Position numbers and translations under genes: made by a program. A DNA stretch of 64,000 nt, from sequence record NC_010811.2; one strand, written 5' to 3'. Numbering within the stretch: position 1 is the stretch's first letter; each line of letters starts with the position of its first letter. Below are positions 9,915 to 20,050 of this stretch, piece by piece. The notes under the pieces were generated by a model. It did not search any database, had not been told where the DNA came from, and worked only from the letters and a program-made list of their open reading frames with translations.

Positions 9915-10356
9915 AGAAGCAGTCAAGCCGTACAACATGGTGCTCGTTCGCGAGTCGGTGCAGGGATGTGATGAAGGATATGTTGTGGTCGCGTATCGTA
10001 GCGATCCCACGAACAAGGTTCGCCGCCGCGATCTGCCCGCAACCATGTACTTCGGTTCGGGCCCCTCGCTGAGCGTCACACCCAAGCCCGGTCACGAGTC
10101 GTTCATGCTGGACACGACAGGCAAGCACAAGTCGTGGATAGACAAAGAGGAGCTGAAGGCTGAAGGATACTCGCCCAGTGAGGCGTTCGTCTACTATCGC
10201 CGAGTTCCGCTCACCAAAGAAGAGCAGGCAATGGTCGACCTGTTCGACGAAATCCTGGCGCGTGCCACCTTGCCCGTCGATCTGAAAGAACGGATCACGG
10301 CGTACCTCAAGGAAATTCAAGAAGGCACTGTGGACGACCCAGTCGTCTCGATCTAA
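9901..10356 (+). CDS. Hypothetical protein
   Basis: ATG 9901 inside ORF 9778..10356. Confidence 0.6.
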   Translation: MAKAKEAVKPYNMVLVRESVQGCDEGYVVVAYRSDPTNKVRRRDLPATMYFGSGPSLSVTPKPGHESFMLDTTGKHKSWIDKEELKAEGYSPSEAFVYYRRVPLTKEEQAMVDLFDEILARATLPVDLKERITAYLKEIQEGTVDDPVVSI

Positions 10357-10381
10357 CTATCACATCAACCGGAGCAACATC

Positions 10382-10918
10382 ATGAACCAAGACACCCAAG
10401 ACCTGATCAAGAAGCGCGACGCGAAGCTCACTCGCCTGAAGTTCACCCCGTCGGCTGCGCCACGCACGTTGGTGGACGGCTGGTTCGCCGACATCACCAA
10501 GCAGCAGGTCTTCGATCGCGTGGTCGCGTTCCTCGTTCTGCAGGGGAAACAGTCGCGGGGTACCGAGAGTGGCGTGCCCTACTGCATGTATCGTGGCACG
10601 AGCAAGTCCATGTGTGCCGCAGGCTGTCTGCTGCCCGACGCGTTCTACGATCGCAAGGCACAAGAAGGCGTGGATTTCTACGGTGTGCTGCGTCGCATTG
10701 AGCGAAGCACGATACCCGGCGCACGTGACTGGGTGAAGATGGTCCTGCCGTTCCGTGATCTGATCCAAAAACTGCAAGAGGCGCACGATGCATTCAATCG
10801 CAAGGTGAGCGCACATCCCGACTTCCTGTCGGCGTTCTTGCATGAAGCGGCGCTGCTGGCCCAAGCGTACGACCTGCAAATGGATCCGTTCATGTATCGC
10901 CAACTGCTGGACGCCTGA
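10382..10918 (+). CDS. Hypothetical protein
   Basis: SD GGAG; CMYRG..KSMCAAGCLLPD motif. Confidence 0.7.
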   Translation: MNQDTQDLIKKRDAKLTRLKFTPSAAPRTLVDGWFADITKQQVFDRVVAFLVLQGKQSRGTESGVPYCMYRGTSKSMCAAGCLLPDAFYDRKAQEGVDFYGVLRRIERSTIPGARDWVKMVLPFRDLIQKLQEAHDAFNRKVSAHPDFLSAFLHEAALLAQAYDLQMDPFMYRQLLDA

Positions 10919-10920
10919 TC

Positions 10921-11109
10921 ATGTGCCTTCCATTCCTTCACAAGTGGACCAAGTGGGAAGTCAAAAGCCGCGCCTCGCTTCAGATGGACATCCTCAACGA
11001 GCAAGGTAAGCGATTCACGCACACCGTGCCTGAGGGCATCGCCCATCAGGAGCGTGTCTGTCAGCGATGCGGCCGCTTGCAAATCCGCATCACAACCGCC
11101 AAACTATAA
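10921..11109 (+). CDS. Small DUF1660-like protein
   Basis: MCLPFLHKWTKW...RVCQRCGRLQ. Confidence 0.55.
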   Translation: MCLPFLHKWTKWEVKSRASLQMDILNEQGKRFTHTVPEGIAHQERVCQRCGRLQIRITTAKL

Positions 11110-11483
11110 TGGACATCGTTCTGCTCCAACCACACACCGTTGAGTTCGTTCCCACACCGTTCCAGTTCGCCGGGTATCAGAAGGGTGCCCAGGACTGGCT
11201 CAAGCAGTGGACCGTGCCCAACAACTTCAAGTCGGTCATCACCAAGAACAGCAAGTACCTGAATCTGGATATTGAGGCAGTGGTCAATGCGTGGTTTCAT
11301 CAGTTGAACGCAGACGCGCGACACGCGATCGGCTACATGCTTCCGCCTGAAGTGCGGGAAACGTATGAATTCACCAAGGACTTCATCTTCCGCTACAAGG
11401 TGCTCAAGCTCGAATGGGGCCAGCAATTCTGGCTGGCCGACGGCGTCATCCATACGGCAGCGTTCACCAAGCCTACGCAGTAA
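11109..11483 (+). CDS. Hypothetical protein
   Basis: TAATG overlap. Confidence 0.6.
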   Translation: MDIVLLQPHTVEFVPTPFQFAGYQKGAQDWLKQWTVPNNFKSVITKNSKYLNLDIEAVVNAWFHQLNADARHAIGYMLPPEVRETYEFTKDFIFRYKVLKLEWGQQFWLADGVIHTAAFTKPTQ

Positions 11484-11517
11484 ATGAAGTAGAGCCCCTC
11501 AACAATCAAGGACAATC

Positions 11518-11811
11518 ATGTTCACAGCAGAGCAAGCACGTAGCACCTATCTCGAGAACTGCCAGCGTCAAGCCGACGAGCATCTCGAGAAGATCGGCCA
11601 ACTCATCGAGAAGCTGTCGGTGGATCGACTGACCACCGCCTGCGATCTGGAAGCTAACCTGCACGTGCGCGAGCGCGTGGTGCAGGGTCTGCAGGAGGCC
11701 GGGTATCACGTCACCTGCACGGGCATCAACGAGCCTCTGACCGAACGCGACGTGTCTGACCAACTCCCAGTGGAGGAAGTCGAGACGTACGAGCTGACCA
11801 TTAGCTGGTAA
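11518..11811 (+). CDS. Hypothetical protein
   Basis: SD AAGGA, 97 aa. Confidence 0.6.
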   Translation: MFTAEQARSTYLENCQRQADEHLEKIGQLIEKLSVDRLTTACDLEANLHVRERVVQGLQEAGYHVTCTGINEPLTERDVSDQLPVEEVETYELTISW

Positions 11812-11844
11812 GCCCCATATTCACCAACAAACAAGACACCCATC

Positions 11845-12210
11845 ATGGACAATCAGCCCTCACAAATTTCGGTCGCCGATATGCTGGAAATCGGCATGAC
11901 AGAGGTTCAGCGCAACTTCAACGCCATCATCGGTGGCCTGAAGGAATTCAATCAAAGTGGTCTGGCGGTAGCCGCTACTGCCCGCGCATTGCAGGAACTG
12001 CATGCCTTGGCTGCGCAGCAAAAGCAACTGGAGGCCCAGATCAAGGCACTTCGGAAGGTGTGGGAAGCTACTGAAGATTGGTTGGACTCCCGCGAAAAGC
12101 CAGCCACTCCCACAGAAGTGGCGGACGGTGCCTTGGCAACGGTGGACGACTCGATCGCTGAGTTCAACAACCATCTCATGATGGTTCTGGCGCAGGCCGC
12201 CAAGGAGTAA
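11845..12210 (+). CDS. Coiled-coil hypothetical protein
   Basis: 121 aa, heptad-like ALQELHALAAQQKQLEAQIKAL. Confidence 0.6.
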   Translation: MDNQPSQISVADMLEIGMTEVQRNFNAIIGGLKEFNQSGLAVAATARALQELHALAAQQKQLEAQIKALRKVWEATEDWLDSREKPATPTEVADGALATVDDSIAEFNNHLMMVLAQAAKE

Positions 12211-12214
12211 GACC

Positions 12215-12694
12215 GTGGATCACTTCCAGAAAGAGCTACAGCAGATCCGCGACGGTATCGACGAGCGCATCCGCGAATTCGGCCACACGTTCGTAGGCGT
12301 CTTTCCCACGGCGGAGGACCCCACCCCGGTCACGCCCTTCATGTACACGGTGGGACTCACCGCGAAGGGCTGGCCCGAGATCATCGCCACCGGCAATCTG
12401 TCGGTGCGTGCGATGCAGTGGTGTCTTGGGGCAGTTGTCAGCACCATGGAGAAGGAGGGCGCTGACTTCCGTACCGGCATCCGCCACGATCTGTTCAACT
12501 TCAAGTGCGAGCTGCGCTGGGTCACAAGCGAAGAGCTGCGCATGGAATACGCGGTGCACGCTACCCGCTTGTATGGCGACAACGTGCGAGTGCTGCAACT
12601 GGTCTGGACCGACGATCAGAACCGATTACCGGACGAACCGGGCTATGACGCTCAGCGCTTCATTCAGCAGGTGTTCCCTGCCACTGACCAATGA
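12215..12694 (+). CDS. DUF4262-like protein
   Basis: GHTFVGVF...PFMYTVGLTAKGWPEIIATG...VLQLVWTDDQNRLP pattern. Confidence 0.75.
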   Translation: MDHFQKELQQIRDGIDERIREFGHTFVGVFPTAEDPTPVTPFMYTVGLTAKGWPEIIATGNLSVRAMQWCLGAVVSTMEKEGADFRTGIRHDLFNFKCELRWVTSEELRMEYAVHATRLYGDNVRVLQLVWTDDQNRLPDEPGYDAQRFIQQVFPATDQ

Positions 12695-12876
12695 CCCCCG
12701 AACACGCAACTGACACCCTCGTGCGCATGGCCCGAGGTAGCAAGGCAACCATGGGCATCATGGTGATGCTCTACACTCTCGGCAAGGATCAATGGCGACG
12801 AGAGAAGCGAGCTGCTCGGCTCACAGCCAATCGCCGTAAGAAGCAGCGTCGCGCACGCACAGGACGTCGATCATGA
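12691..12876 (+). CDS. Small basic hypothetical protein
   Basis: ATGA overlaps on both sides. Confidence 0.5.
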   Translation: MTPEHATDTLVRMARGSKATMGIMVMLYTLGKDQWRREKRAARLTANRRKKQRRARTGRRS

Positions 12877-13103
12877 ACGCGCTCCAATACGTCACCGACA
12901 TGAGCGCCGTGTGCGGCGGCTTCTTCTCTATGGAGAAGCCCTGCACCAAGGCCAGTGGATCGGAGATCCGTCGCTGGATCCAACAGTCGTCTATCGTTGT
13001 GAACGGGCAAGTGGTGCGCGACCCGAAGGCTGTTATCGCACTGCCTGTCACCAGTTTCGTGCTGTTTCCCAAGTCACCCAAGAAGCGCATCACCATTCTA
13101 TGA
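12873..13103 (+). CDS. Stand-alone S4-like RNA-binding domain (TyrRS C-terminal-like)
   Basis: SGSEIRRWIQQSSIVVNGQVVRDP matches the S4 SxSEARRLIxQGxVxVNG pattern. Confidence 0.7.
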   Translation: MNALQYVTDMSAVCGGFFSMEKPCTKASGSEIRRWIQQSSIVVNGQVVRDPKAVIALPVTSFVLFPKSPKKRITIL

Positions 13104-13236
13104 TGGATCTCGACGACCTGACCTTTGTTCCTGGCTTTGTGCTGGGCATTGTTATCGGACTAGCCGCTGGTCTCCTGCTTTGCGGCTACCACGCAATCAC
13201 TACCTTCTAACCCAAAGACACCCAACGAGGTTACTC

Positions 13237-14217
13237 ATGGACGGCATCATTCGCAAACTCACCCGTGGCGCATACGACATCCAGCAACTGCGCATCGCAA
13301 CCGGACTGCGCGTCGTTGCACAATTCCGCGATCGGTTCAACGTGCCGGAACCCGTGACCGACGTGCAACTGGATCATGCAACGACGGGCGAAGCGCGTGC
13401 GGCACTCGACGCCGAGGCCAAGGAAAAGGCGGACAAGCAACGCGACGCCCTGCTCAAGCAGATCCGCATTCACTTCGACCGCGTGACCGATGGCATCGTT
13501 GCCACCCAACGCCGCAAGACCTATCACTTCGACGACGTGTTCAAGGACGAGACCGACGTGTGGTTCATGGAGAACTACATGGGGATTCTGGACCAGGAAC
13601 AGCAGGCGTTCAAGCGTCTGGAGCGCGCACTTGGCAAGAACGGCTTCTACAATGACTGGCTGGCGAACGTCAAGGGCATCGGCCCGGCGATGGCTGGCGT
13701 TCTCATCTCGGAACTCGATCCGTACCGCGCCAAGTACCCGTCCAGCTTCTGGAAGTACTCGGGGCTGGATGTGGTGACGGTCGTCGATCCCGAAACGCAT
13801 GACATCGTCCGCACCGAGGGGCGCCGCAACTTCAAGCATCACCTCGTGGAGTCCACATACACGGACCGCGATGGCAAGGAACAGACGAAGATGGGGCTGT
13901 CGTACAACCCATGGCTCAAGACCAAGCTGCTCGCGGTGATGGCACCCTCCTTCCTCAAGTGCTCGCACCCGGTCTACAGCAAGATGTACTACGACTACAA
14001 GCTCCGCCAGTTGAATCGGCCCGAGCTCAAGGACAACAAGGCGGTGAAGGCCATCGCCCACAAGCGCGCACTGCGCTACGTGGCCAAGATGTTCCTGCGC
14101 GATCTGCATACGGCATGGCGCACGTATGAGGGGCTGGAAGTCTATCCGTCGTACGAGGAAGCGAAGCTGGGCATGACCCACGGTCGCGATCCTTCGGCTG
14201 AAGCCGCACGTCAGTAA
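13237..14217 (+). CDS. tasA: IS110/Nop-domain RNA-binding protein, TasA-like (no RuvC or HNH domain seen)
   Basis: 326 aa; N-terminal helical region (LRIATGLR), WLANVKGIGPAMAGVLISEL HhH-like motif, SSFWKYSGLDV, YNPWLKTKL, YYDYK, AHKRALRYVAKMFLRDL; no DEDD domain and no PxxxxSG catalytic-Ser loop; directly upstream of a dual-repeat array. Confidence 0.8.
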   Translation: MDGIIRKLTRGAYDIQQLRIATGLRVVAQFRDRFNVPEPVTDVQLDHATTGEARAALDAEAKEKADKQRDALLKQIRIHFDRVTDGIVATQRRKTYHFDDVFKDETDVWFMENYMGILDQEQQAFKRLERALGKNGFYNDWLANVKGIGPAMAGVLISELDPYRAKYPSSFWKYSGLDVVTVVDPETHDIVRTEGRRNFKHHLVESTYTDRDGKEQTKMGLSYNPWLKTKLLAVMAPSFLKCSHPVYSKMYYDYKLRQLNRPELKDNKAVKAIAHKRALRYVAKMFLRDLHTAWRTYEGLEVYPSYEEAKLGMTHGRDPSAEAARQ

Positions 14218-14225
14218 AGCAAGAA

Positions 14226-14245
14226 CAGGGACCTTCGGGTCCCTG
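14226..14245 (+). terminator. cUUCGg hairpin between tas gene and array (terminator or processing/stabilising stem)
   Basis: CAGGGACC-TTCG-GGTCCCTG, perfect 8-bp stem, no U-tract after it. Confidence 0.6.
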
Positions 14246-14257
14246 CCAAACAGGAGA

Positions 14258-15578
14258 AGTCATCCTACGATAAATAGCGCACCAGAAGCGCAAAGACTCC
14301 CCTATAGCGGTGGTGTACCCTGTGAACTAAGACAACCATTGCTAGGTAGTGAGTCAATATCATACAGTCATCCTATAGATGAGAGCGCATCATTGTGCTA
14401 AAGACACCCATACTCAGTGAGTGATCGAGCCACAGAAGTCCTCCTTGGCAGGAGAGTGATCCTATGGAACAAAGAAACCCGAGATCATAGAGTGTGCCTC
14501 TTGAAATGTAGTCACCCTATAAAAGCGAGCGACCTCAGAGATAAAGTCACCCCAATAGTTGTAGTGTGCCCGCAGTAGCAAGTCACCCAAGTCCGATCCT
14601 AGCGACTCTTCTACGAAAGCAACCCATCGCAGCTTAGTGTTCCTTCCAATGGCAGTCATCCAGTATCATAGAGTGCACCCGTCCGCCGTGAGCCCGCCGT
14701 AATAGCGCAGTGCATACCTAAAAAGCTAAGTCACCCTGAGAGATGCTAGTGAGCCACGAACCGGAGACACCCGATATAGTACAGCGCTCCACGAATATGG
14801 AGGCATCCAACCAAGAGTAGTGACCCAAACGCAAGATTCATCCCAGAGACACAAGTGCTCCATGTGCGCGAAAGTAACCCCAAAGAAGGGAGAGCACCTG
14901 ACTGACCTAGTCACCCCTTAGTACACAGTGTTCCTTTGTAGTCAAGTCCTCCAGAAACAAGGAGTGAGTCCGTAAACTGCTAGACATCCATTAACGCAAA
15001 GTGTGTCATCATGGGGGGAGTCAGCCACAGAGCAGTAGCGAGCCTACAAAACTAAGACACCCAGAAAAGTGAAGCGCGCCGCATCAGGCTAGTCACCCTT
15101 AGAATTGAAGTGCACCTAGGATACGAAGACGCCCCATATCAGCTAGTGCGCCACCCGAATGAAGGCATCCTCCCTTGTTTAGCGGCCCTATGACGTAAGG
15201 CACCCTCATCATGCCAGCGGCCTTGTAAGATGAGACACCCGTTTCACATGAGTGAACCGACCGGTATAAGGCAACCTCGGTATGCCAGTGACCCGAGAAC
15301 CAAAGACAACCGATCCCCTCTAGTGCGTCCACCCGAAATAGAACACCCGAGCCACGAGCGCTCCGTTCAAGATTAGTCACCCGTTATTGCCAAGAGCACC
15401 AGAACAATCCAGCCTCCCGTTACACAGGAGTGAGCCCTCATGTCAGAGTCAGCCATAAAGGCATAGTGACCCGCGTTCTCAAGTCCCCCAATCTACATGA
15501 GTGACCCTTAGTTCCAAGACCTCCTTAACTCTTGAGTGTGCCTGTTGCAGTGAGCAATCCCATTGTATGCAGCGTGCC
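14258..15578 (+). ncRNA. TIGR-like dual-repeat guide-RNA array, 37 units of about 36 nt
   Basis: Repeat A (AGTCACCC/AGACACCC/AGTCATCC type) starts at 14258, 14294, 14330, 14366, 14402 ... 15553; repeat B (AGTGAGCC/AGCGCACC/AGTGTGCC type) at 14276, 14312, 14348 ... 15571; mean A-to-A period 1295/36 = 36.0 nt; spacers 9-12 nt (mostly 10), apparently unique; no credible ORF. Confidence 0.88.
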
Positions 15579-15642
15579 CTGACGTCTCCTCTCGAAAGCA
15601 AGCTACGCAGCCTTCACATCTAACCAGAACCTGGAGCAGTAA

Positions 15643-16605
15643 ATGACTGTTGAATACCTCATCCCTCGTTCCCTTACGTACGTGGAACGCGACTGCCAAC
15701 CGCTGGGACTGGCACGTGCGCTCAAAGCGCTGTCTCATGAATTCGATCCGCCAACAGCGCGTATCGCCGACGAGAATGCGAGTCGGCTTGCCGCAGAGCT
15801 TGGCTTCTTTGAGATGAAGGAGCCTACGCCGTCTGCGCGACTCGACTGCATCCGTTTGATGCGCGAGCGCGTGGCTGTCTATCTCAAGAAGCGCTTCGAG
15901 CATCTGATGCCTGAGCCCATGTGCGCCACTTACGACTGGGCAGCGGACATGGAACTCGTACTGATGCGGTCTTACAAGCCTGAGATTGGCCGCTGCACAC
16001 CCATGGCGCGCACGGTCAACATGAGCGTGTTGGAAGTGGAAGAGAAGGAAGCCTTGGCGGCGCCTCGTCCTCCGCTTGTGTCGGGCATCAACTCCACGTT
16101 TCAGCCTCTGACGAAGAAGGCATATACACGCTCGCAGTACGCACACGGCGACTGTCGTGTAGCCGAGGTGTTGAATGACGTGCGTGCCTGCATTCCGATC
16201 CCTGACATTCAGTTCTTCATCGTCGTGCGCACAGTGCAGACTGCCGACGTTCTTGCCTGGGCGTGCACCCAGTTCATGCCAGATGAGTTGGTACTCACTC
16301 TTACGGGCACGACCAGCTCCGACGAGCGGCAGCGTTCCATCGAGGCATTCAACAATGGGCACTGCAAAGTGCTGATCGCCACGTTCCACATGCTTCAGGG
16401 CTTTCGCTTTGCAAAGCGGCCAGCGATAGCGGTAAGCTCCACGGCTCCCTGCTACGAAGAAGACGCAAATCAGATCCTCGGCCGGCTGAACGCAGATACG
16501 CCGGTGGTCCACACCAACTTGGCAGTGTGGCGCATCCACACCAACTTGGCAGTGTGGCGCATCCAGGACCACGAAGACCGCCAACACTGTGCACAGGAGG
16601 ACTGA
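15643..16605 (+). CDS. Protein with an isolated SF2 helicase C-terminal (RecA2-like) domain
   Basis: LTGTTSSDERQRSIEAFNNGHCKVLIATFHMLQGF...QILGRLN; no Walker A/DEAD half seen. Confidence 0.65.
   Translation: MTVEYLIPRSLTYVERDCQPLGLARALKALSHEFDPPTARIADENASRLAAELGFFEMKEPTPSARLDCIRLMRERVAVYLKKRFEHLMPEPMCATYDWAADMELVLMRSYKPEIGRCTPMARTVNMSVLEVEEKEALAAPRPPLVSGINSTFQPLTKKAYTRSQYAHGDCRVAEVLNDVRACIPIPDIQFFIVVRTVQTADVLAWACTQFMPDELVLTLTGTTSSDERQRSIEAFNNGHCKVLIATFHMLQGFRFAKRPAIAVSSTAPCYEEDANQILGRLNADTPVVHTNLAVWRIHTNLAVWRIQDHEDRQHCAQED
16508..16565 (+). repeat. Perfect 27-nt tandem duplication (HTNLAVWRI x2)
   Basis: TCCACACCAACTTGGCAGTGTGGCGCA at 16508 and 16535, then TCCA. Confidence 0.9.
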
Positions 16606-16607
16606 TC

Positions 16608-16814
16608 ATGGCGCTGACCTACGAAGAACTTCTGCACATGAAGCATACGTTGGACACAACGCGTGACGACGATCGCGGCCATCATTACCTGCCGGAGAAG
16701 TACAGCCAGGACCTGAGCAAGTGCATCAACCTTGTGAACCGCGAGCTGCGCGCCCTGAAAAAGGTGAAGGATTTACAGGCCATAGGTCGCGCAAAACTGG
16801 GTGTTGCGAAATGA
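16608..16814 (+). CDS. Small hypothetical protein
   Basis: SD GGAGG, ATG 16608. Confidence 0.55.
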   Translation: MALTYEELLHMKHTLDTTRDDDRGHHYLPEKYSQDLSKCINLVNRELRALKKVKDLQAIGRAKLGVAK

Positions 16815-16833
16815 CAACAGTGGCGGGTGCCCC

Positions 16834-16862
16834 TTGTGGGCGCCCCCGCTTTGTGGCATAAT
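16834..16862 (+). promoter_or_regulatory. Sigma70-like promoter, same family as 6825 and 30890
   Basis: TTGTGG-N17-CATAAT with extended -10 TG, followed by the RBS stem-loop at 16893-16909. Confidence 0.65.
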
Positions 16863-16914
16863 GAACGCACCGCAGTAGTACACGTTCCACTTCTCCCATC
16901 GAAACGGAGGCCGT

Positions 16915-17271
16915 ATGCAATTCCCTTACCTGAACACCTGCGCACGTGTGATGATTTGCGATTTCATCATGGGCTGTCGAGACTACGAAAAGCTGTCTCA
17001 AATCCAGCGTGAGCAGGTAGACCGCGCCGCGCAGGTGGCAGTCGAAAATCTGTCGCAGTTCTTCCCTGCTTCTCGCATCAAATCCACGGAGCGGTGGCTG
17101 CGCAAGCAATACGATGAGCAGCCCGAAGACCTCATCGCCATGTCTATCGGTGACGACATCACAAGCGAAGGCGACATGGGAATCACGTACGAACACGACG
17201 ACTTCATCGTGACTGTCCCGCGTCGCCATGACGAGGTCTTGTCCGAACTCGGCGAAATCGTGGGGGCCTGA
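16915..17271 (+). CDS. Hypothetical protein (probably early-expressed)
   Basis: Follows promoter and RBS motif. Confidence 0.65.
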   Translation: MQFPYLNTCARVMICDFIMGCRDYEKLSQIQREQVDRAAQVAVENLSQFFPASRIKSTERWLRKQYDEQPEDLIAMSIGDDITSEGDMGITYEHDDFIVTVPRRHDEVLSELGEIVGA

Positions 17272-17273
17272 CC

Positions 17274-17870
17274 ATGGCACGTTCTCCTAGCGAGAACGTA
17301 GAACTCTGTCTGCAGTCGCTCGTTGAGAACGCTCCTGGATGTCTGTTGCATCCGGCGTTCCACGAGCGTCTTGGCTTTAAGGGACTCTACGTTCGTGATC
17401 TCCTGCGCGACGGCAGTCGCGGCTATGCAACGGTGCAGGGCACCATCTTTCTTGGTGCACGCAGCACCGTCAAGTTTCGCACGCCCAGTCCGTACTCCGT
17501 GCCCGGCGGCAAGTCCGACATGTCGCCCACGGGAGTGCTGTCCCACGAGTTTGGACACATCTTGCAGTTCGCGCTGGCAGGCGCACGCCGCAACGATCTA
17601 CTGCAAGAGCAGCGCGCCATCTACACCGACGATCGTCGCAACGGCATTACCGGCTATGGCCGCAGTCACTGGCAGGAAGACTTCGCAGAAGCGCATCGCC
17701 TCTATCTACTGAACCCGGATCTGCTCCGCACGTTGAGCGTCGAGCGCCTGAAGCTGGTAGAGCGTTGCTATCGCGCTGTTCTTGGCTGTCTGCCACGTCA
17801 CAAGCAGTTTTCTGTCGTACGCCGCCAGCGGGCGTCGCTGCTGGGCAACATGCTTCGGAGTCCATCATGA
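17274..17870 (+). CDS. Zincin-like metallopeptidase
   Basis: VLSHEFGH (HExxH) and YGRSHWQEDFAEA. Confidence 0.75.
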   Translation: MARSPSENVELCLQSLVENAPGCLLHPAFHERLGFKGLYVRDLLRDGSRGYATVQGTIFLGARSTVKFRTPSPYSVPGGKSDMSPTGVLSHEFGHILQFALAGARRNDLLQEQRAIYTDDRRNGITGYGRSHWQEDFAEAHRLYLLNPDLLRTLSVERLKLVERCYRAVLGCLPRHKQFSVVRRQRASLLGNMLRSPS

Positions 17871-18163
17871 AGCTGAATCAAGTGGCCCAAGGCCAGCAAT
17901 TCCTGAAGTCGTGTGACATCCGCGCCAACTTCTTCGCAGCGATACGCGACCCCGAGGCTCCAACGCGTGAGGTCCTCGTGTTCCGCACCCATCTTACGGT
18001 GGAGGTGGTTGTTGCGCGTCTCGCTGCGTACATGCATGTGAAGCGTGTGGACTTGGATGGCGGAGATCGCATGGTCCACGTGCGACTGCCTGCGGGCGGC
18101 ACTGGCCGTATCCACGTGCAACGCACTCCGTCGTTCACCCGCATTCGCTTCTTGGAGCAATGA
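17867..18163 (+). CDS. Hypothetical protein
   Basis: ATGA overlap. Confidence 0.5.
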   Translation: MKLNQVAQGQQFLKSCDIRANFFAAIRDPEAPTREVLVFRTHLTVEVVVARLAAYMHVKRVDLDGGDRMVHVRLPAGGTGRIHVQRTPSFTRIRFLEQ

Positions 18164-18373
18164 TGCTTGACTTCCACTCTATCCAAACGTCCGATCGTGT
18201 TCGTGCGCGTCTGGGATTGCGTCCTGAATTCAGGACGGACCTTTTAGCGGAAGGTGCGTTGGATGCACCAAGTCGCCTTCCCGCGGGTTCCACCGAACGC
18301 ATCGACTGGAGTCCGACCGAGGTCTTCTCGACGACGTCCGTCACGTTCTGCTACTATCGTCGAGGTTAAGTCA

Positions 18374-18706
18374 ATGACCGAGCAGCCTGATCTGTACACC
18401 GAATTCATGGACGCGTTCCGTGCATTCACCGGGGCGTTCGACACTCCGATCGCGCGCCGCCGCCAATCCAACGAGCTGGCTGAAGACGCACGTGAGCGTC
18501 TGCGCCAGTTCGCACAGCGATTCACCACGCTGCGCAACCAACTCGGCCCGTTCACTGAAGCGGAACTCCGACTGTCCGCAGTCCGCGAAGCGCTGCGCGC
18601 TATGACAGAAGAGGAGCGCACGGAGGTCTATCGCGACTACTGCTATCACTGCGGCACGTATCAAGCGGACCACATCCGTGGTTGCCAGTGCTGGAACGAC
18701 GAGTAG
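18374..18706 (+). CDS. Hypothetical protein with C-terminal Cys cluster
   Basis: YCYHCGT...GCQCWNDE. Confidence 0.6.
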   Translation: MTEQPDLYTEFMDAFRAFTGAFDTPIARRRQSNELAEDARERLRQFAQRFTTLRNQLGPFTEAELRLSAVREALRAMTEEERTEVYRDYCYHCGTYQADHIRGCQCWNDE

Positions 18707-18709
18707 ATC

Positions 18710-20050
18710 ATGACCAAAGTAGACTGGGATTTTCTGAAGTCGCAGCTCGAAAGTATTTTCACGTGCCCTAGCACTGGGTTCGGTACGCCGATCGAGTGGA
18801 CGGGCATCGCACGCCCTGACCGATTCTCGGTGCCTCCGCATCACATGCGTTGGTGGTGCACCGTGGCGCTGAAGGCCATTGTCCGCCAAGTGTGGGACAA
18901 GCCTGATCACTGGGCTGTCGTTCGCGTAGCTGACGGCGAAGTACGTCGGGTGTTGAGCATGCCGCGCACCGTTCTGTGTACCGCACGCCATCTGTACATC
19001 CAGCAGTGGTTGGAAACGCATTACAGTCGCCCCCGTGATCTGTCGCCCATCTCGTACGAGCAGGCATGCGCCGGGGCCAGCACGTTGCTGCAGACTGCGG
19101 ATCGCAAGTCGGACATCGTGTTCACGGACACCATGCTGCTCGGTACCTTTCGCCAGCAACCCTCGGTCGAAGACAGCGAGCTGTACGATCTGCGCTTGGC
19201 GCTGACACCTGCGGTCCTGGAATACGCAGGCCATGCACTGCGCAACTGTCTGCGCGAGGATTATGAGGCCTACTTCAAAGGACGCCACGTGCTGATCCTT
19301 ACGCAGCATCAGTCGTCCACTGTGCTTGGCGTGTCTCACACGCACAAGGATCTGTCGTTGTTCGACGAGGTATCGCTGTCCATGTGCCTGTTCTGGCAGC
19401 GCCCGCGTGGCTGGAAGAATGTACTGTGTCCAATCACCATGCCTGAGCGGCTGGATGTTGTTCTCAATCATCCACTGCCTGCAGGTCCCTGCATGGGTGA
19501 TCGCATTCGATGCATTCAGTACTTCGATCTGCGTAAGTCGACCGAAGTAATGGTCGTGCAGAGCCGAAGGCGTCGTGCAGTCCGGCGTCTGGCGCCCCTC
19601 CTTCAGGGCCTTGATTCGGCCACTGACCTAATCTGCGGACAGCCTACCGTTCTGCCCGAATTGCAGTCGCAATCACGGATCCATCGTCAAGGTGCGCGTG
19701 AACCGCTGGTCGTCAACTACGTGTATCCGCACCAACAGCAGGTGGTGGCTTCTATAAGTCAGCGGTCCGGCGGCATTCCCAGCGGTGAAATGTTGGTCAC
19801 GGGGTCCCGCGTGGGTCGCACCGTTCTGTCCATGACTGAGGAACAACGACGTCGCGTCCTTGGCCTATCAGTTGACCGCTCTCCGATGGAGGCGCGTTTG
19901 CCCGCACCTAACCCGACGCCGGATCAGGATCTTGTGCAGGACATACACCAGACGGTCGCGCGCTGGAATCACTTGCGCGACTACACGATTCTAATGATGG
20001 ACGAGGCACCTCGGCCGCGTCGTCCCCGAACCAACAACTCTCAATCATGA
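18710..20050 (+). CDS. Hypothetical protein (446 aa)
   Basis: Long uninterrupted ORF. Confidence 0.65.
   Translation: MTKVDWDFLKSQLESIFTCPSTGFGTPIEWTGIARPDRFSVPPHHMRWWCTVALKAIVRQVWDKPDHWAVVRVADGEVRRVLSMPRTVLCTARHLYIQQWLETHYSRPRDLSPISYEQACAGASTLLQTADRKSDIVFTDTMLLGTFRQQPSVEDSELYDLRLALTPAVLEYAGHALRNCLREDYEAYFKGRHVLILTQHQSSTVLGVSHTHKDLSLFDEVSLSMCLFWQRPRGWKNVLCPITMPERLDVVLNHPLPAGPCMGDRIRCIQYFDLRKSTEVMVVQSRRRRAVRRLAPLLQGLDSATDLICGQPTVLPELQSQSRIHRQGAREPLVVNYVYPHQQQVVASISQRSGGIPSGEMLVTGSRVGRTVLSMTEEQRRRVLGLSVDRSPMEARLPAPNPTPDQDLVQDIHQTVARWNHLRDYTILMMDEAPRPRRPRTNNSQS

What the first reader, a model, noticed from the sequence alone, without database searches (positions are those of the whole stretch)
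13237..15578. Phage-encoded TIGR-Tas-like RNA-guided system: IS110/Nop protein plus a 37-unit dual-repeat guide array
Seen: a 326-aa protein with IS110 C-terminal/Nop-like motifs, then a UUCG hairpin, then a 1.3-kb non-coding array with an 18-nt half-period and a 36-nt full period. Two short repeats alternate with unique spacers of about 10 nt, e.g. AGTCATCC-tacgataaat-AGCGCACC-agaagcgcaa-AGACTCCC-ctatagcggt-GGTGTACC-ctgtgaacta-AGACAACC. There is no Cas gene and the repeats are too short and degenerate for CRISPR. Known: this layout matches TIGR-Tas (Faure et al., Science 2025), in which Nop-domain proteins related to IS110 and box C/D snoRNP proteins process tandem arrays into 36-nt two-spacer guides that target dsDNA. 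Inference: this phage carries such a programmable system with about 37 guides. The family is described; whether this locus and repeat type are, I cannot tell.
Basis: partly seen in the sequence, partly recalled or inferred. Interest (0 to 1): 0.96.

Follow-up and report, generated by a model that had tools for sequence, protein, structure and literature searches.

The report
TIGR-TasA guide-RNA system in phage phiRSL1
The jumbo Ralstonia phage phiRSL1 carries a real but already-described kind of RNA-guided system: a nuclease-free TasA protein followed by an array of 37 two-spacer guide units, which probably binds chosen DNA sites without cutting them.

Summary
The window is bases 1-64000 of Ralstonia phage phiRSL1. 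ORF034 (13237-14217, annotated 'transposase') passes NCBI's curated TIGR-Tas model. It is 38% identical over its full length to the experimentally studied FpTasA. With an alignment it folds (pLDDT 91.6) into a structure whose best solved matches are TasR and TasH. It has no HNH or RuvC domain, so it is a TasA.

After a UUCG hairpin comes a half edge repeat, then 37 loop-type and 37 edge-type 8-nt repeats in strict alternation (14244-15578). They are about 18 nt apart, giving 37 predicted guides of about 36 nt. The repeat types, with AG at the start and CC at the end, match the published FpTIGR and SpTIGR arrays. It is the only such array in the 231-kb genome.

About 70 phage relatives carry a similar array next to their tas gene, while the flanking genes are not shared. 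No target was found in the phage's own genome, and the host genome could not be searched.

Verdict: a new member of a known family, worth re-annotating. Its main value is that phage and host are both cultured, so natural targets could be sought.

The parts
13237..14217 (+). tasA: a 326-aa TIGR-associated protein with a coiled coil plus Nop domain and no nuclease domain. RefSeq ORF034 calls it 'transposase' and starts it at 13180.
   Evidence: NCBIfam NF052498 scores 116.1 bits against a cut-off of 100. It is 38% identical to FpTasA over 308 aa, E 4e-59. Foldseek top hits are TasR 9mty and TasH 9w04/21kl. Pfam shows no HNH or RuvC hit even at E up to 10. Y306 and H315 are invariant in 48/48 aligned relatives.
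14226..14245 (+). Hairpin between the tasA stop codon and the array: 8-bp stem, UUCG loop, no U tract after it on the + strand.
   Evidence: Fold energy -16.5 kcal/mol, z -2.7. The terminator scan flags it only on the - strand. A comparable UUCG hairpin sits in the same place in the published SpTIGR locus.
14244..14247 (+). 5'-truncated (half) edge repeat that opens the array. It reads TGCC and overlaps the 3' arm of the hairpin.
   Evidence: It lies exactly 18 nt before the first loop repeat and has CC at repeat positions 7-8, while the first half of the repeat is missing. The same arrangement holds in 18 of 24 distinct relatives' arrays and in FpTIGR and SpTIGR.
14244..15578 (+). TIGR dual-repeat array: half edge, then 37 loop-type and 37 edge-type 8-nt repeats in alternation, with 74 spacers of 9-12 nt (55 of them 10 nt). 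This gives 37 predicted tigRNA units.
   Evidence: It is the only such chain in the 231-kb genome. Rfam has no match.
14244..14279 (+). Predicted tigRNA 1 (36 nt): half edge, spacer A, loop repeat 14258-14265, spacer B, half edge.
   Evidence: Boundaries are inferred from cutting in the middle of the edge repeat, as shown for SpTIGR (the 'half-edge' constructs; 36-nt RNAs). Parsed.
15539..15574 (+). Predicted tigRNA 37 (36 nt). The array ends with a complete edge repeat at 15571-15578.
   Evidence: No + strand terminator follows. The next gene, ORF035, starts at 15643.

Best explanation
This is a TIGR-TasA system of the dual-repeat type.

Shown by sequence, homology and modelling:
- tasA encodes a Nop-domain protein with a coiled coil and no nuclease.
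- The 1.3-kb stretch downstream is a 37-unit array in which an edge repeat and a loop repeat alternate. Each repeat starts with AG (box D) and ends with CC (box C), and they are separated by spacers of about 10 nt.

Inferred from the characterised relatives FpTasA, SpTasH and TaTasR:
- tasA and the array are transcribed together on the + strand.
- A TasA dimer binds the box motifs of one loop repeat and the two flanking edge halves.
- The precursor is cut in the middle of each edge repeat, probably by the protein's own conserved Tyr/His pair (Y306, H315). This would release guides of about 36 nt, built as 4 + 10 + 8 + 10 + 4 nt.
- Spacer A pairs with one DNA strand and spacer B with the other strand of the adjoining segment.
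- With no nuclease, the complex would sit on the DNA as a roadblock or repressor rather than cut it.

The targets are not in the phage's own genome. I take them to lie in the host or in competing mobile elements, but this is unproven.
For: Protein family:
- NF052498 scores above its cut-off.
- 38% identity to FpTasA over the full length.
- PHROG 4285 at E 6e-76.
- The model has pLDDT 91.6 and its best structural matches are TasR and TasH, with TM-score up to 0.73 (normalised by the length of the solved chain).
- No nuclease domain. The model's N-terminus is two long helices.

Array:
- Column counts for the loop type: A 37/37, G 36/37, position 4 C 32/37, position 5 A 28/37, positions 7-8 C 37/37 each.
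- Column counts for the edge type: A 36/37, G 37/37, position 3 T 24 or C 11, position 4 G 37/37, position 7 C 30 or T 7, position 8 C 33/37. Spacer columns carry almost no information.
- The most frequent actual copies are the same two repeat types as in FpTIGR and SpTIGR. Faure et al. define box C as CCN and box D as AG for those arrays.

Edge and loop assignment:
- Relatives' arrays open with a half repeat of the second type (18 of 24 arrays). Where they end on a loop repeat, 7 of 17 are followed by its first half only.
- SpTIGR construct names identify that repeat type as the edge.

Linkage of protein and array:
- A chain of at least 8 repeats in 75 of 82 related loci scanned, in most cases immediately next to tas (positions; 36-nt periodicity), often overlapping the tas stop codon.
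- None of seven neighbouring phiRSL1 genes has a homologue in any related locus.

Processing residues:
- Y306 aligns with the catalytic Y289 of SpTasH.
- Y306 and H315 are invariant in 48/48 sequences.

Nuclease-free TasA proteins bind DNA and repress transcription (bioRxiv 10.64898/2026.09.09.750476).
Against: - There are no expression or processing data for this locus.
- Only 19 of 37 predicted units are exactly 36 nt. Twelve carry a variant in a box dinucleotide, so only 16 are fully canonical. The array is less regular than those of its relatives.
- The array ends with a full edge repeat and no terminator, unlike the typical description in Faure et al..
- The conserved His sits 9 residues after the Tyr, against 7 in SpTasH. 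It lies in a low-confidence loop of the model.
- No target was found. The best matches in the phage genome have 2 mismatches in 18, the same as shuffled guides.
- Repression by TasA has so far been shown for stem-loop-type TasA proteins, not for this dual-repeat clade.
Confidence: 0.85

Rival explanations
1. The module is a decaying relic. The protein may still fold, but the array has drifted and few or none of its units act as guides.
For: 18 of 37 units are not 36 nt long and 12 have box variants. 26% of the repeat-to-repeat steps are not 18 nt, while most of the related arrays have few or no irregular steps. Spacers are AT-shifted, as neutrally drifting non-coding DNA would be. No target was found.
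Against: The tasA frame is intact and keeps all 35 invariant residues of the family alignment. Sixteen units are fully canonical and 25 have all box dinucleotides. Sixteen of the 19 irregular steps lie in the edge-to-loop step; for some of them (edges ending in three Cs) the repeat can equally be read one base shorter, which would place the odd base inside the edge repeat, where the RNA is cut. The AG and CC box positions are nearly invariant across 74 repeats, which drift would erase.
Confidence: 0.1
2. The periodic, AT-rich stretch acts as DNA rather than RNA, for example as an iteron-like origin or a protein-binding array. Its position next to a Nop-domain gene would then be incidental.
For: It is the lowest-GC 1.3-kb stretch of the whole 231-kb genome, and it carries short repeats at a regular spacing.
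Against: The same arrangement, in the same orientation relative to tas, recurs in most of the 75 related loci where an array was found, although their flanks are unrelated. The homologous FpTIGR and SpTIGR arrays are known to be transcribed and processed into 36-nt RNAs bound by the protein. The repeats are strand-asymmetric, and the array's half edge overlaps the tas stop codon in many relatives.
Confidence: 0.03
3. It is an IS110-type mobile element: a transposase with a bridge-RNA-like guide, as the RefSeq label 'transposase' suggests.
For: There is a weak Pfam match to the IS110 C-terminal domain (E 0.01, below threshold). IS621 and ISCro4 recombinases appear as more distant structural matches.
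Against: The IS110 equivalog model scores 14.4 bits against a cut-off of 140. There is no N-terminal DEDD/RuvC-like catalytic domain. Instead of a single bridge RNA there are 37 tandem units. The phage has one copy only.
Confidence: 0.01
4. It is a CRISPR-like array, or a box C/D-type guide set that directs RNA modification rather than DNA binding.
For: It has interspaced repeats with unique spacers. The Nop fold is shared with box C/D proteins.
Against: The repeats are 8 nt long and of two alternating kinds, and there is no cas gene beside them. Rfam finds neither a CRISPR direct-repeat family nor a snoRNA family. The repeats do not carry the canonical snoRNA box motifs, and no methyltransferase partner lies nearby. 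The characterised TasR acts on DNA and not on RNA.
Confidence: 0.02

Closest known systems
FpTIGR-TasA of Flavonifractor plautii (Faure et al., Science 2025, PMC12045711)
   Same: The protein is 38% identical over 308 aa, with the same length class and the same absence of a nuclease domain. The array lies downstream, opens with a half edge repeat at the stop codon, and uses the same two 8-nt repeat types with AG at the start and CC at the end and about 10 nt between them. FpTasA was shown to bind 36-nt processed RNAs.
   Different: phiRSL1 has extra segments at residues 38-57 and 182-191, a hairpin between the gene and the array, a longer array (37 units), less regular unit lengths, and a lytic jumbo-phage context. 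The conserved His is 9 rather than 7 residues after the Tyr.
SpTIGR-TasH of Salicola phage CGphi29
   Same: It is phage-borne. It uses the same pair of repeat types, with the second type established as the edge repeat. It has a UUCG hairpin between the tas stop codon and the half edge. The C-terminal Tyr aligns. The structural match reaches a TM-score of 0.73, normalised by the length of the solved chain.
   Different: TasH carries an N-terminal HNH nuclease and cuts DNA, and phiRSL1 has no such domain. SpTIGR spacers provide 16 variable nt per guide.
TaTIGR-TasR (PDB 9mty)
   Same: It is the best structural and PDB sequence match. It shares the dimeric Nop and coiled-coil scaffold and the tandem-spacer logic.
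   Different: TasR has an N-terminal RuvC nuclease, and its repeats start with UG and end with CCA. phiRSL1 has about 30 extra residues in the beta-hairpin after the HhH-GIGP motif.
Stem-loop TasA proteins and inactive TasR proteins shown to be RNA-guided repressors (bioRxiv 10.64898/2026.09.09.750476)
   Same: They are nuclease-free Tas effectors that bind DNA by guide and silence transcription. This is the activity I expect here.
   Different: Most of those tested use stem-loop tigRNAs and lack the Tyr/His processing loop. phiRSL1 belongs to the dual-repeat class and keeps the loop.
IS110-family bridge-RNA recombinases and archaeal/eukaryotic box C/D Nop proteins
   Same: They share the Nop-type RNA-binding fold and a two-part guide logic.
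   Different: phiRSL1 has no DEDD recombinase domain, no methyltransferase partner, and a tandem array instead of single RNAs.

Membership tests
TIGR-Tas | A Tas protein with the Nop-type RNA-binding domain and a coiled coil | tested here: met
   NF052498 scores 116.1 bits against a cut-off of 100. Foldseek's best hits are TasR and TasH. It is 38% identical to FpTasA.
TIGR-Tas | An adjacent array of two distinct alternating short repeats (8-12 nt) with short spacers and a unit of about 36 nt | tested here: met
   37 + 37 repeats of 8 nt in strict alternation. Unit length is 36 nt (20 times), 35 (9), 37 (6) and 38 (1). Autocorrelation peaks at 18 and 36.
TIGR-Tas | Box D at the start and box C at the end of both repeat types, the same in edge and loop repeats | tested here: met
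   AG at positions 1-2 in 36/37 loop-type and 36/37 edge-type repeats. CC at positions 7-8 in 37/37 loop-type repeats; in edge-type repeats C is 30/37 at position 7 and 33/37 at position 8. Faure et al. name AG and CCN as the boxes of FpTIGR and SpTIGR.
TIGR-Tas | [quoted passage not shown] | tested here: met
   TGCC at 14244-14247, 18 nt before the first loop repeat. The same holds in 18 of 24 relatives.
TIGR-Tas | [quoted passage not shown] | tested here: not met
   The last edge repeat, 15571-15578, is complete, and no + strand terminator-like site follows. Seven of 17 relatives ending on a loop repeat do show the truncated edge.
TIGR-Tas | Processing of the array transcript into 36-nt tigRNAs bound by the protein | not testable with these tools
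   The only evidence is by analogy to FpTasA, SpTasH and TaTasR.
TIGR-Tas, dual-repeat class | A conserved Tyr/His processing pair on a C-terminal loop of the Nop domain | tested here: inconclusive
   Y306 aligns with SpTasH Y289. SpTasH H296 aligns with M313, but H315, two residues further on, is invariant in 48/48 sequences. The loop has pLDDT below 50.
TIGR-Tas | Tandem-spacer recognition of the two strands of a DNA target | not testable with these tools
   No target is known. The scan of the phage's own genome was negative in both geometries with gaps of 0-2.
TasA subtype | No HNH or RuvC nuclease domain | tested here: met
   Pfam shows only weak IS110 C-terminal and HhH hits at E up to 10. 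The model starts with two long helices and has no beta-rich N-terminal domain. The protein aligns end to end with FpTasA.
IS110 bridge-RNA recombinase | An N-terminal DEDD/RuvC-like catalytic domain plus the IS110 C-terminal domain at family score | tested here: not met
   NF033542 scores 14.4 bits against a cut-off of 140. There is no DEDD-domain Pfam hit.
CRISPR-Cas | One repeat type of about 25-36 nt, spacers of similar size, and cas genes | tested here: not met
   The repeats are 8 nt long and of two types. No cas gene lies among the neighbours. Rfam finds no match.
Box C/D sRNP | [quoted passage not shown] | tested here: not met
   The repeats carry only the AG and CC dinucleotides. Rfam finds no snoRNA family. 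No such partner appears among the annotated neighbours. The whole phage proteome was not searched for one.

The most novel reading that the evidence does not exclude
phiRSL1 uses TasA and its 37 guide pairs as a multiplexed, cut-free silencer of AT-rich sites, such as promoters, in its host Ralstonia or in rival mobile elements.

Three observations fit this reading and are not in the papers I read:
- Spacers are AT-shifted in every one of 32 distinct relatives, yet their GC content tracks that of the home genome.
- In relatives, the same half-spacer is re-used in the same slot with different partner spacers.
- The tas-plus-array module travels without any accessory gene.

If true, this would be a cultured phage-host pair in which natural TIGR targets, and the way arrays grow, can be read out.
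Probability: 0.25. Interest if true: 0.7.

Novelty: new member of a known kind. Interest (0 to 1): 0.4.

Why it matters
TIGR-Tas systems were described in 2025, and the papers state that their natural targets and biological roles are unknown. The reason given is that most loci sit on metagenomic contigs without a known host.

phiRSL1 is a cultured, fully sequenced jumbo phage with a cultured, sequenced host. Its locus is one of the longer arrays in its clade. Sequence and expression data from this pair could therefore show what a nuclease-free TIGR system aims at.

In practical terms, ORF034 is mislabelled 'transposase' and the 1.4-kb array region is unannotated in the public records. The NCBI family name 'RNA-guided endonuclease' also overstates what this nuclease-free protein can do.

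Against this, the family is known, the repeat type is known, and the locus was probably already swept up in the published catalogue of about 20,000 tas loci.

Tried and rejected
- **Tandem Repeats Finder:** nothing found, because the repeats are too short and degenerate.
- **Rfam at permissive threshold:** no family matched.
- **Structure from the single sequence:** unusable, pLDDT 39. It was replaced by a model built from a 48-sequence alignment.
- **Extra base pair inside the repeats:** I looked for covariation like that described for TasR edge repeats. There is none beyond the G-C box pair.
- **Self-targets:** all 37 guide pairs were tested in both pairing frames, two target geometries and gaps of 0-2 against the whole phiRSL1 genome, scanned in five pieces. 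The best hits had 2-3 mismatches in 18, the same as control geometries and shuffled spacers.
- **Targets of 578 relatives' guides in 0.74 Mb of related loci:** no excess over control geometries and no hit in a guide's own locus.
- **Spacers shared between phiRSL1 and its relatives:** none beyond chance. A first version of this test was confounded by repeat sequence and was redone in register.
- **Conserved neighbour genes:** none of seven flanking phiRSL1 proteins has a homologue in any related locus. The helicase-C gene after the array is therefore not a conserved partner.
- **Second array or second tas gene in the phage:** none.
- **Prior description of the locus:** no paper holds both 'RSL1' and 'TIGR-Tas'. 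It is absent from the held part of Faure's Table S1, but that file was cut when stored.
- **BLAST of predicted 18-20-nt targets against the plasmid and phage collections:** not run. Such short matches would exceed the tool's E-value ceiling and would not be significant in databases of that size.
- **Host genome:** it was not available to any tool in usable form.
Full report
**Where the window comes from.** The region 10000-20000 is 100% identical to Ralstonia phage phiRSL1 (AB366653.2 / NC_010811.2, 231,255 bp, genus Mieseafarmvirus) at the same coordinates. The window is therefore bases 1-64000 of that jumbo phage. In RefSeq the protein is ORF034, labelled 'transposase'. The stretch 14218-15642 carries no annotation.

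**Checking the observation.** The ORF from the ATG at 13237 to the stop at 14217 gives 326 aa. The ATG has a GAGG upstream, and homologues align from its first residues, so I prefer it to the RefSeq TTG at 13180.

An 8-bp hairpin with a UUCG loop lies at 14226-14245 (-16.5 kcal/mol, z -2.7). Autocorrelation of 14240-15600 peaks at lags 18 (0.364) and 36 (0.354), with echoes at their multiples. The baseline is about 0.24, and there is no excess at lag 3.

A chained weight-matrix scan places 74 repeats of 8 nt, 37 of each of two types, in strict alternation from 14258 to 15578. Steps are 18 nt (54), 17 (11), 19 (6) and 20 (2).

- First type, column counts: A 37/37, G 36/37, variable, C 32/37, A 28/37, variable, C 37/37, C 37/37.
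- Second type, column counts: A 36/37, G 37/37, T 24 or C 11, G 37/37, variable, variable, C 30 or T 7, C 33/37.
- Spacer columns carry almost no information.

The same scan over the whole phage, both strands, returns this chain only, with score 418 (the scan lists chains of at least 5 repeats scoring at least 15). Tandem Repeats Finder and Rfam see nothing. No sizeable ORF covers the array.

**The protein.** Pfam gives only sub-threshold hits to the IS110 C-terminal domain and a helix-hairpin-helix motif. NCBIfam NF052498, 'TIGR-Tas system RNA-guided endonuclease', matches residues 6-295 at 116.1 bits against a curated cut-off of 100. The IS110 transposase model scores 14.4 against 140.

Among solved structures, the sequence matches TasR (9mty, E 6e-11) and TasH (E 6e-4). 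A single-sequence model was useless. With 48 aligned relatives the model reaches pLDDT 91.6. Its ten best PDB matches are all TasR or TasH complexes, followed by the IS621 and ISCro4 bridge recombinases.

The model starts with two long helices (3-34 and 51-84). It has a four-stranded beta insertion at 179-221 and no beta-rich N-terminal domain.

Table S1 of Faure et al. prints the sequence of FpTasA, the nuclease-free Tas protein they showed to bind 36-nt RNAs. phiRSL1 ORF034 is 38% identical to it over 308 aa, end to end. The protein is therefore a TasA. The word 'endonuclease' in the NCBI family name does not fit it.

SpTasH processes its own precursor with Y289 and H296 (PMC13421893), and this pair is said to be conserved in dual-repeat systems. 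Y306 of phiRSL1 aligns with Y289. H296 aligns with M313, but H315 is invariant in 48/48 relatives, as is Y306. I count this as consistent but not settled.

- Twenty-four distinct relatives' arrays begin with a first-type repeat. In all 24 the slot 18 nt upstream lacks the first half of a repeat, and in 18 it has CC at positions 7-8. It often overlaps the tas stop codon.
- Of 17 arrays ending with a first-type repeat, 7 are followed by the first half of a second-type repeat only.
- The SpTasH constructs in Faure's Table S3 name the second type as the edge repeat and its last four bases as the 'half-edge'.

So the second type is the edge and the first is the loop. In phiRSL1 the half edge is TGCC at 14244-14247, inside the 3' arm of the hairpin.

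Cutting in mid-edge predicts 37 guides between 14244 and 15574, built as 4 + 10 + 8 + 10 + 4 nt. Their lengths are 36 nt (19), 35 (11), 37 (5), 38 (1) and 39 (1). All box dinucleotides are intact in 25 of them, and 16 are fully canonical. Spacer B is 10 nt in 34 of 37 units. Spacer A varies more (10 nt in 21 units, 9 in 10, 11 in 5, 12 in 1). Sixteen of the 19 irregular steps lie in the edge-to-loop step.

**Relatives.** The protein has 494 relatives at E up to 1e-3 in the large protein collection. A close clade (53-73% identity) lies on contigs of 84-254 kb. IMG/VR holds 195 loci, of which 80 were kept. The species-representative genomes hold only 28, nearly all on MAG contigs, none from Ralstonia, and one in a complete genome, Sporomusa aerivorans.

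Most related loci show a 36-nt periodic stretch directly beside tas. Its half-steps are either 18/18 or 14/22. Matrices derived from phiRSL1 find a chain of at least 8 repeats in 75 of 82 loci scanned. Among the 32 distinct arrays that match the matrices well, size runs from 6 to 42 units, and only one exceeds phiRSL1's 37.

The two closest relatives that I read directly have the same repeat types right after tas but quite different spacers. None of seven phiRSL1 flanking proteins has a homologue in any related locus. The gene plus its array is the conserved unit, with no accessory gene.

**Targets.** From the cleavage geometry in Faure et al., I considered two arrangements of the half-sites. 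I tested both, in both possible pairing frames and with gaps of 0-2, against the whole phage genome read in five pieces. The best hits had 2-3 mismatches in 18, the same as wrong-geometry and shuffled controls. The phage does not target itself.

Guides of relatives find nothing above control in 0.74 Mb of related loci. The host genome was not available to the tools. Matches of 18-20 nt are below what the BLAST tools can report or what would be significant in gigabase collections. The natural targets remain unknown, as for all TIGR systems so far.

**How it most likely works.**

- Shown: the parts and their homology.
- Inferred: co-transcription with tasA. The hairpin has no U tract, and in relatives the array overlaps the stop codon.
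- Inferred: binding of a TasA dimer to the AG and CC boxes, and self-processing in the edge repeats into guides of about 36 nt.
- Inferred: pairing of the two spacers with opposite strands of adjoining segments, then occupation of the site without cleavage.

Nuclease-free Tas proteins have been shown to repress transcription in this way.

I put the identity as a TIGR-TasA system at about 0.95. I put the full mechanism at about 0.6-0.7, because nothing is known about expression or targets here and the array is unusually irregular.

**Comparison and novelty.** The family, the TasA subtype, the dual-repeat layout and even this pair of repeat types are published. No paper I could search mentions phiRSL1 together with TIGR-Tas. 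The locus is not in the held part of Faure's Table S1, but that file is truncated. The authors did mine NCBI phage genomes, so the locus is probably in their catalogue. I file it as a new member of a known kind.

**Side observations.**

- The array is the lowest-GC 1.3-kb stretch of the genome (0.512 against a mean of 0.58). Its spacers have 43% GC.
- In 32 of 32 distinct relatives spacer GC is below that of the rest of the locus (mean 0.39 against 0.50), and the two values correlate (r = 0.75).
- Inside relatives' arrays, near-identical spacers recur 37 times against 1.25 expected. They always recur at even index distance, meaning in the same slot. Fourteen recur together with a similar neighbour, which points to unit duplication. 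Twenty-three recur with a different partner.
- phiRSL1 shows no such pairs.

These points bear on how arrays grow and on what they aim at. They were seen in relatives and need the full catalogue to be tested.

Noticed in passing
window 14258-15578, and loci L002-L083: The array is the lowest-GC 1.3-kb stretch of the whole 231-kb genome, and its spacers have 43% GC against 58% for the window. In 32 of 32 distinct relatives spacer GC is below that of the rest of the locus (mean 0.39 against 0.50), and the two values correlate (r = 0.75).
   Followed up: partly
arrays in L003, L013, L019, L026, L042, L072 and others: Near-identical spacers recur within one array: 37 pairs against 1.25 expected. 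They always recur at even index distance, meaning in the same spacer slot. Fourteen recur with a similar neighbour (unit duplication) and 23 with a different partner spacer. phiRSL1's array has none.
   Followed up: partly
loci L006-L012, L018, L029-L034, L052 and others: Many relatives keep the 36-nt unit but split it 14/22 instead of 18/18. Their two repeats or spacers are therefore of unequal length.
   Followed up: no
window 14226-14245; SpTIGR sequence in Faure Table S1: A stable UUCG hairpin sits between the tas stop codon and the half edge repeat in phiRSL1 and in the distantly related Salicola phage TasH locus. L003 has a different hairpin in the same place. Many other relatives have none, because the stop codon overlaps the half edge.
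   Followed up: partly
window 13180-13239: RefSeq starts ORF034 at a TTG at 13180, with no ribosome-binding site and overlapping ORF032. The ATG at 13237 has GAGG upstream and matches the N-termini of homologues. ORF031-033 are small, mutually overlapping calls that look doubtful.
   Followed up: partly
window 15643-16605 (ORF035): The gene right after the array has only the C-terminal helicase domain (Pfam Helicase_C, E 1.6e-6). It also carries an in-frame tandem duplication of a 9-residue segment near its C-terminus. It has no homologue next to the arrays of relatives.
   Followed up: partly
phiRSL1 record 103055-103984 (outside the window; L084 39156-40085): ORF170 is annotated 'CRISPR/Cas system associated' in RefSeq. 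It was not examined, and no CRISPR array was looked for.
   Followed up: no
window 12215-12694 (ORF030): A hypothetical protein with a clear DUF4262 domain (E 9e-21) lies about 0.5 kb upstream of tasA. It is not conserved next to tas in relatives.
   Followed up: no
L104 (Sporomusa aerivorans DSM 13326 chromosome, 2403550-2410425): This is the only complete bacterial genome among 185,579 species representatives that encodes a relative of this TasA clade (37% identity). It is presumably in a prophage.
   Followed up: no
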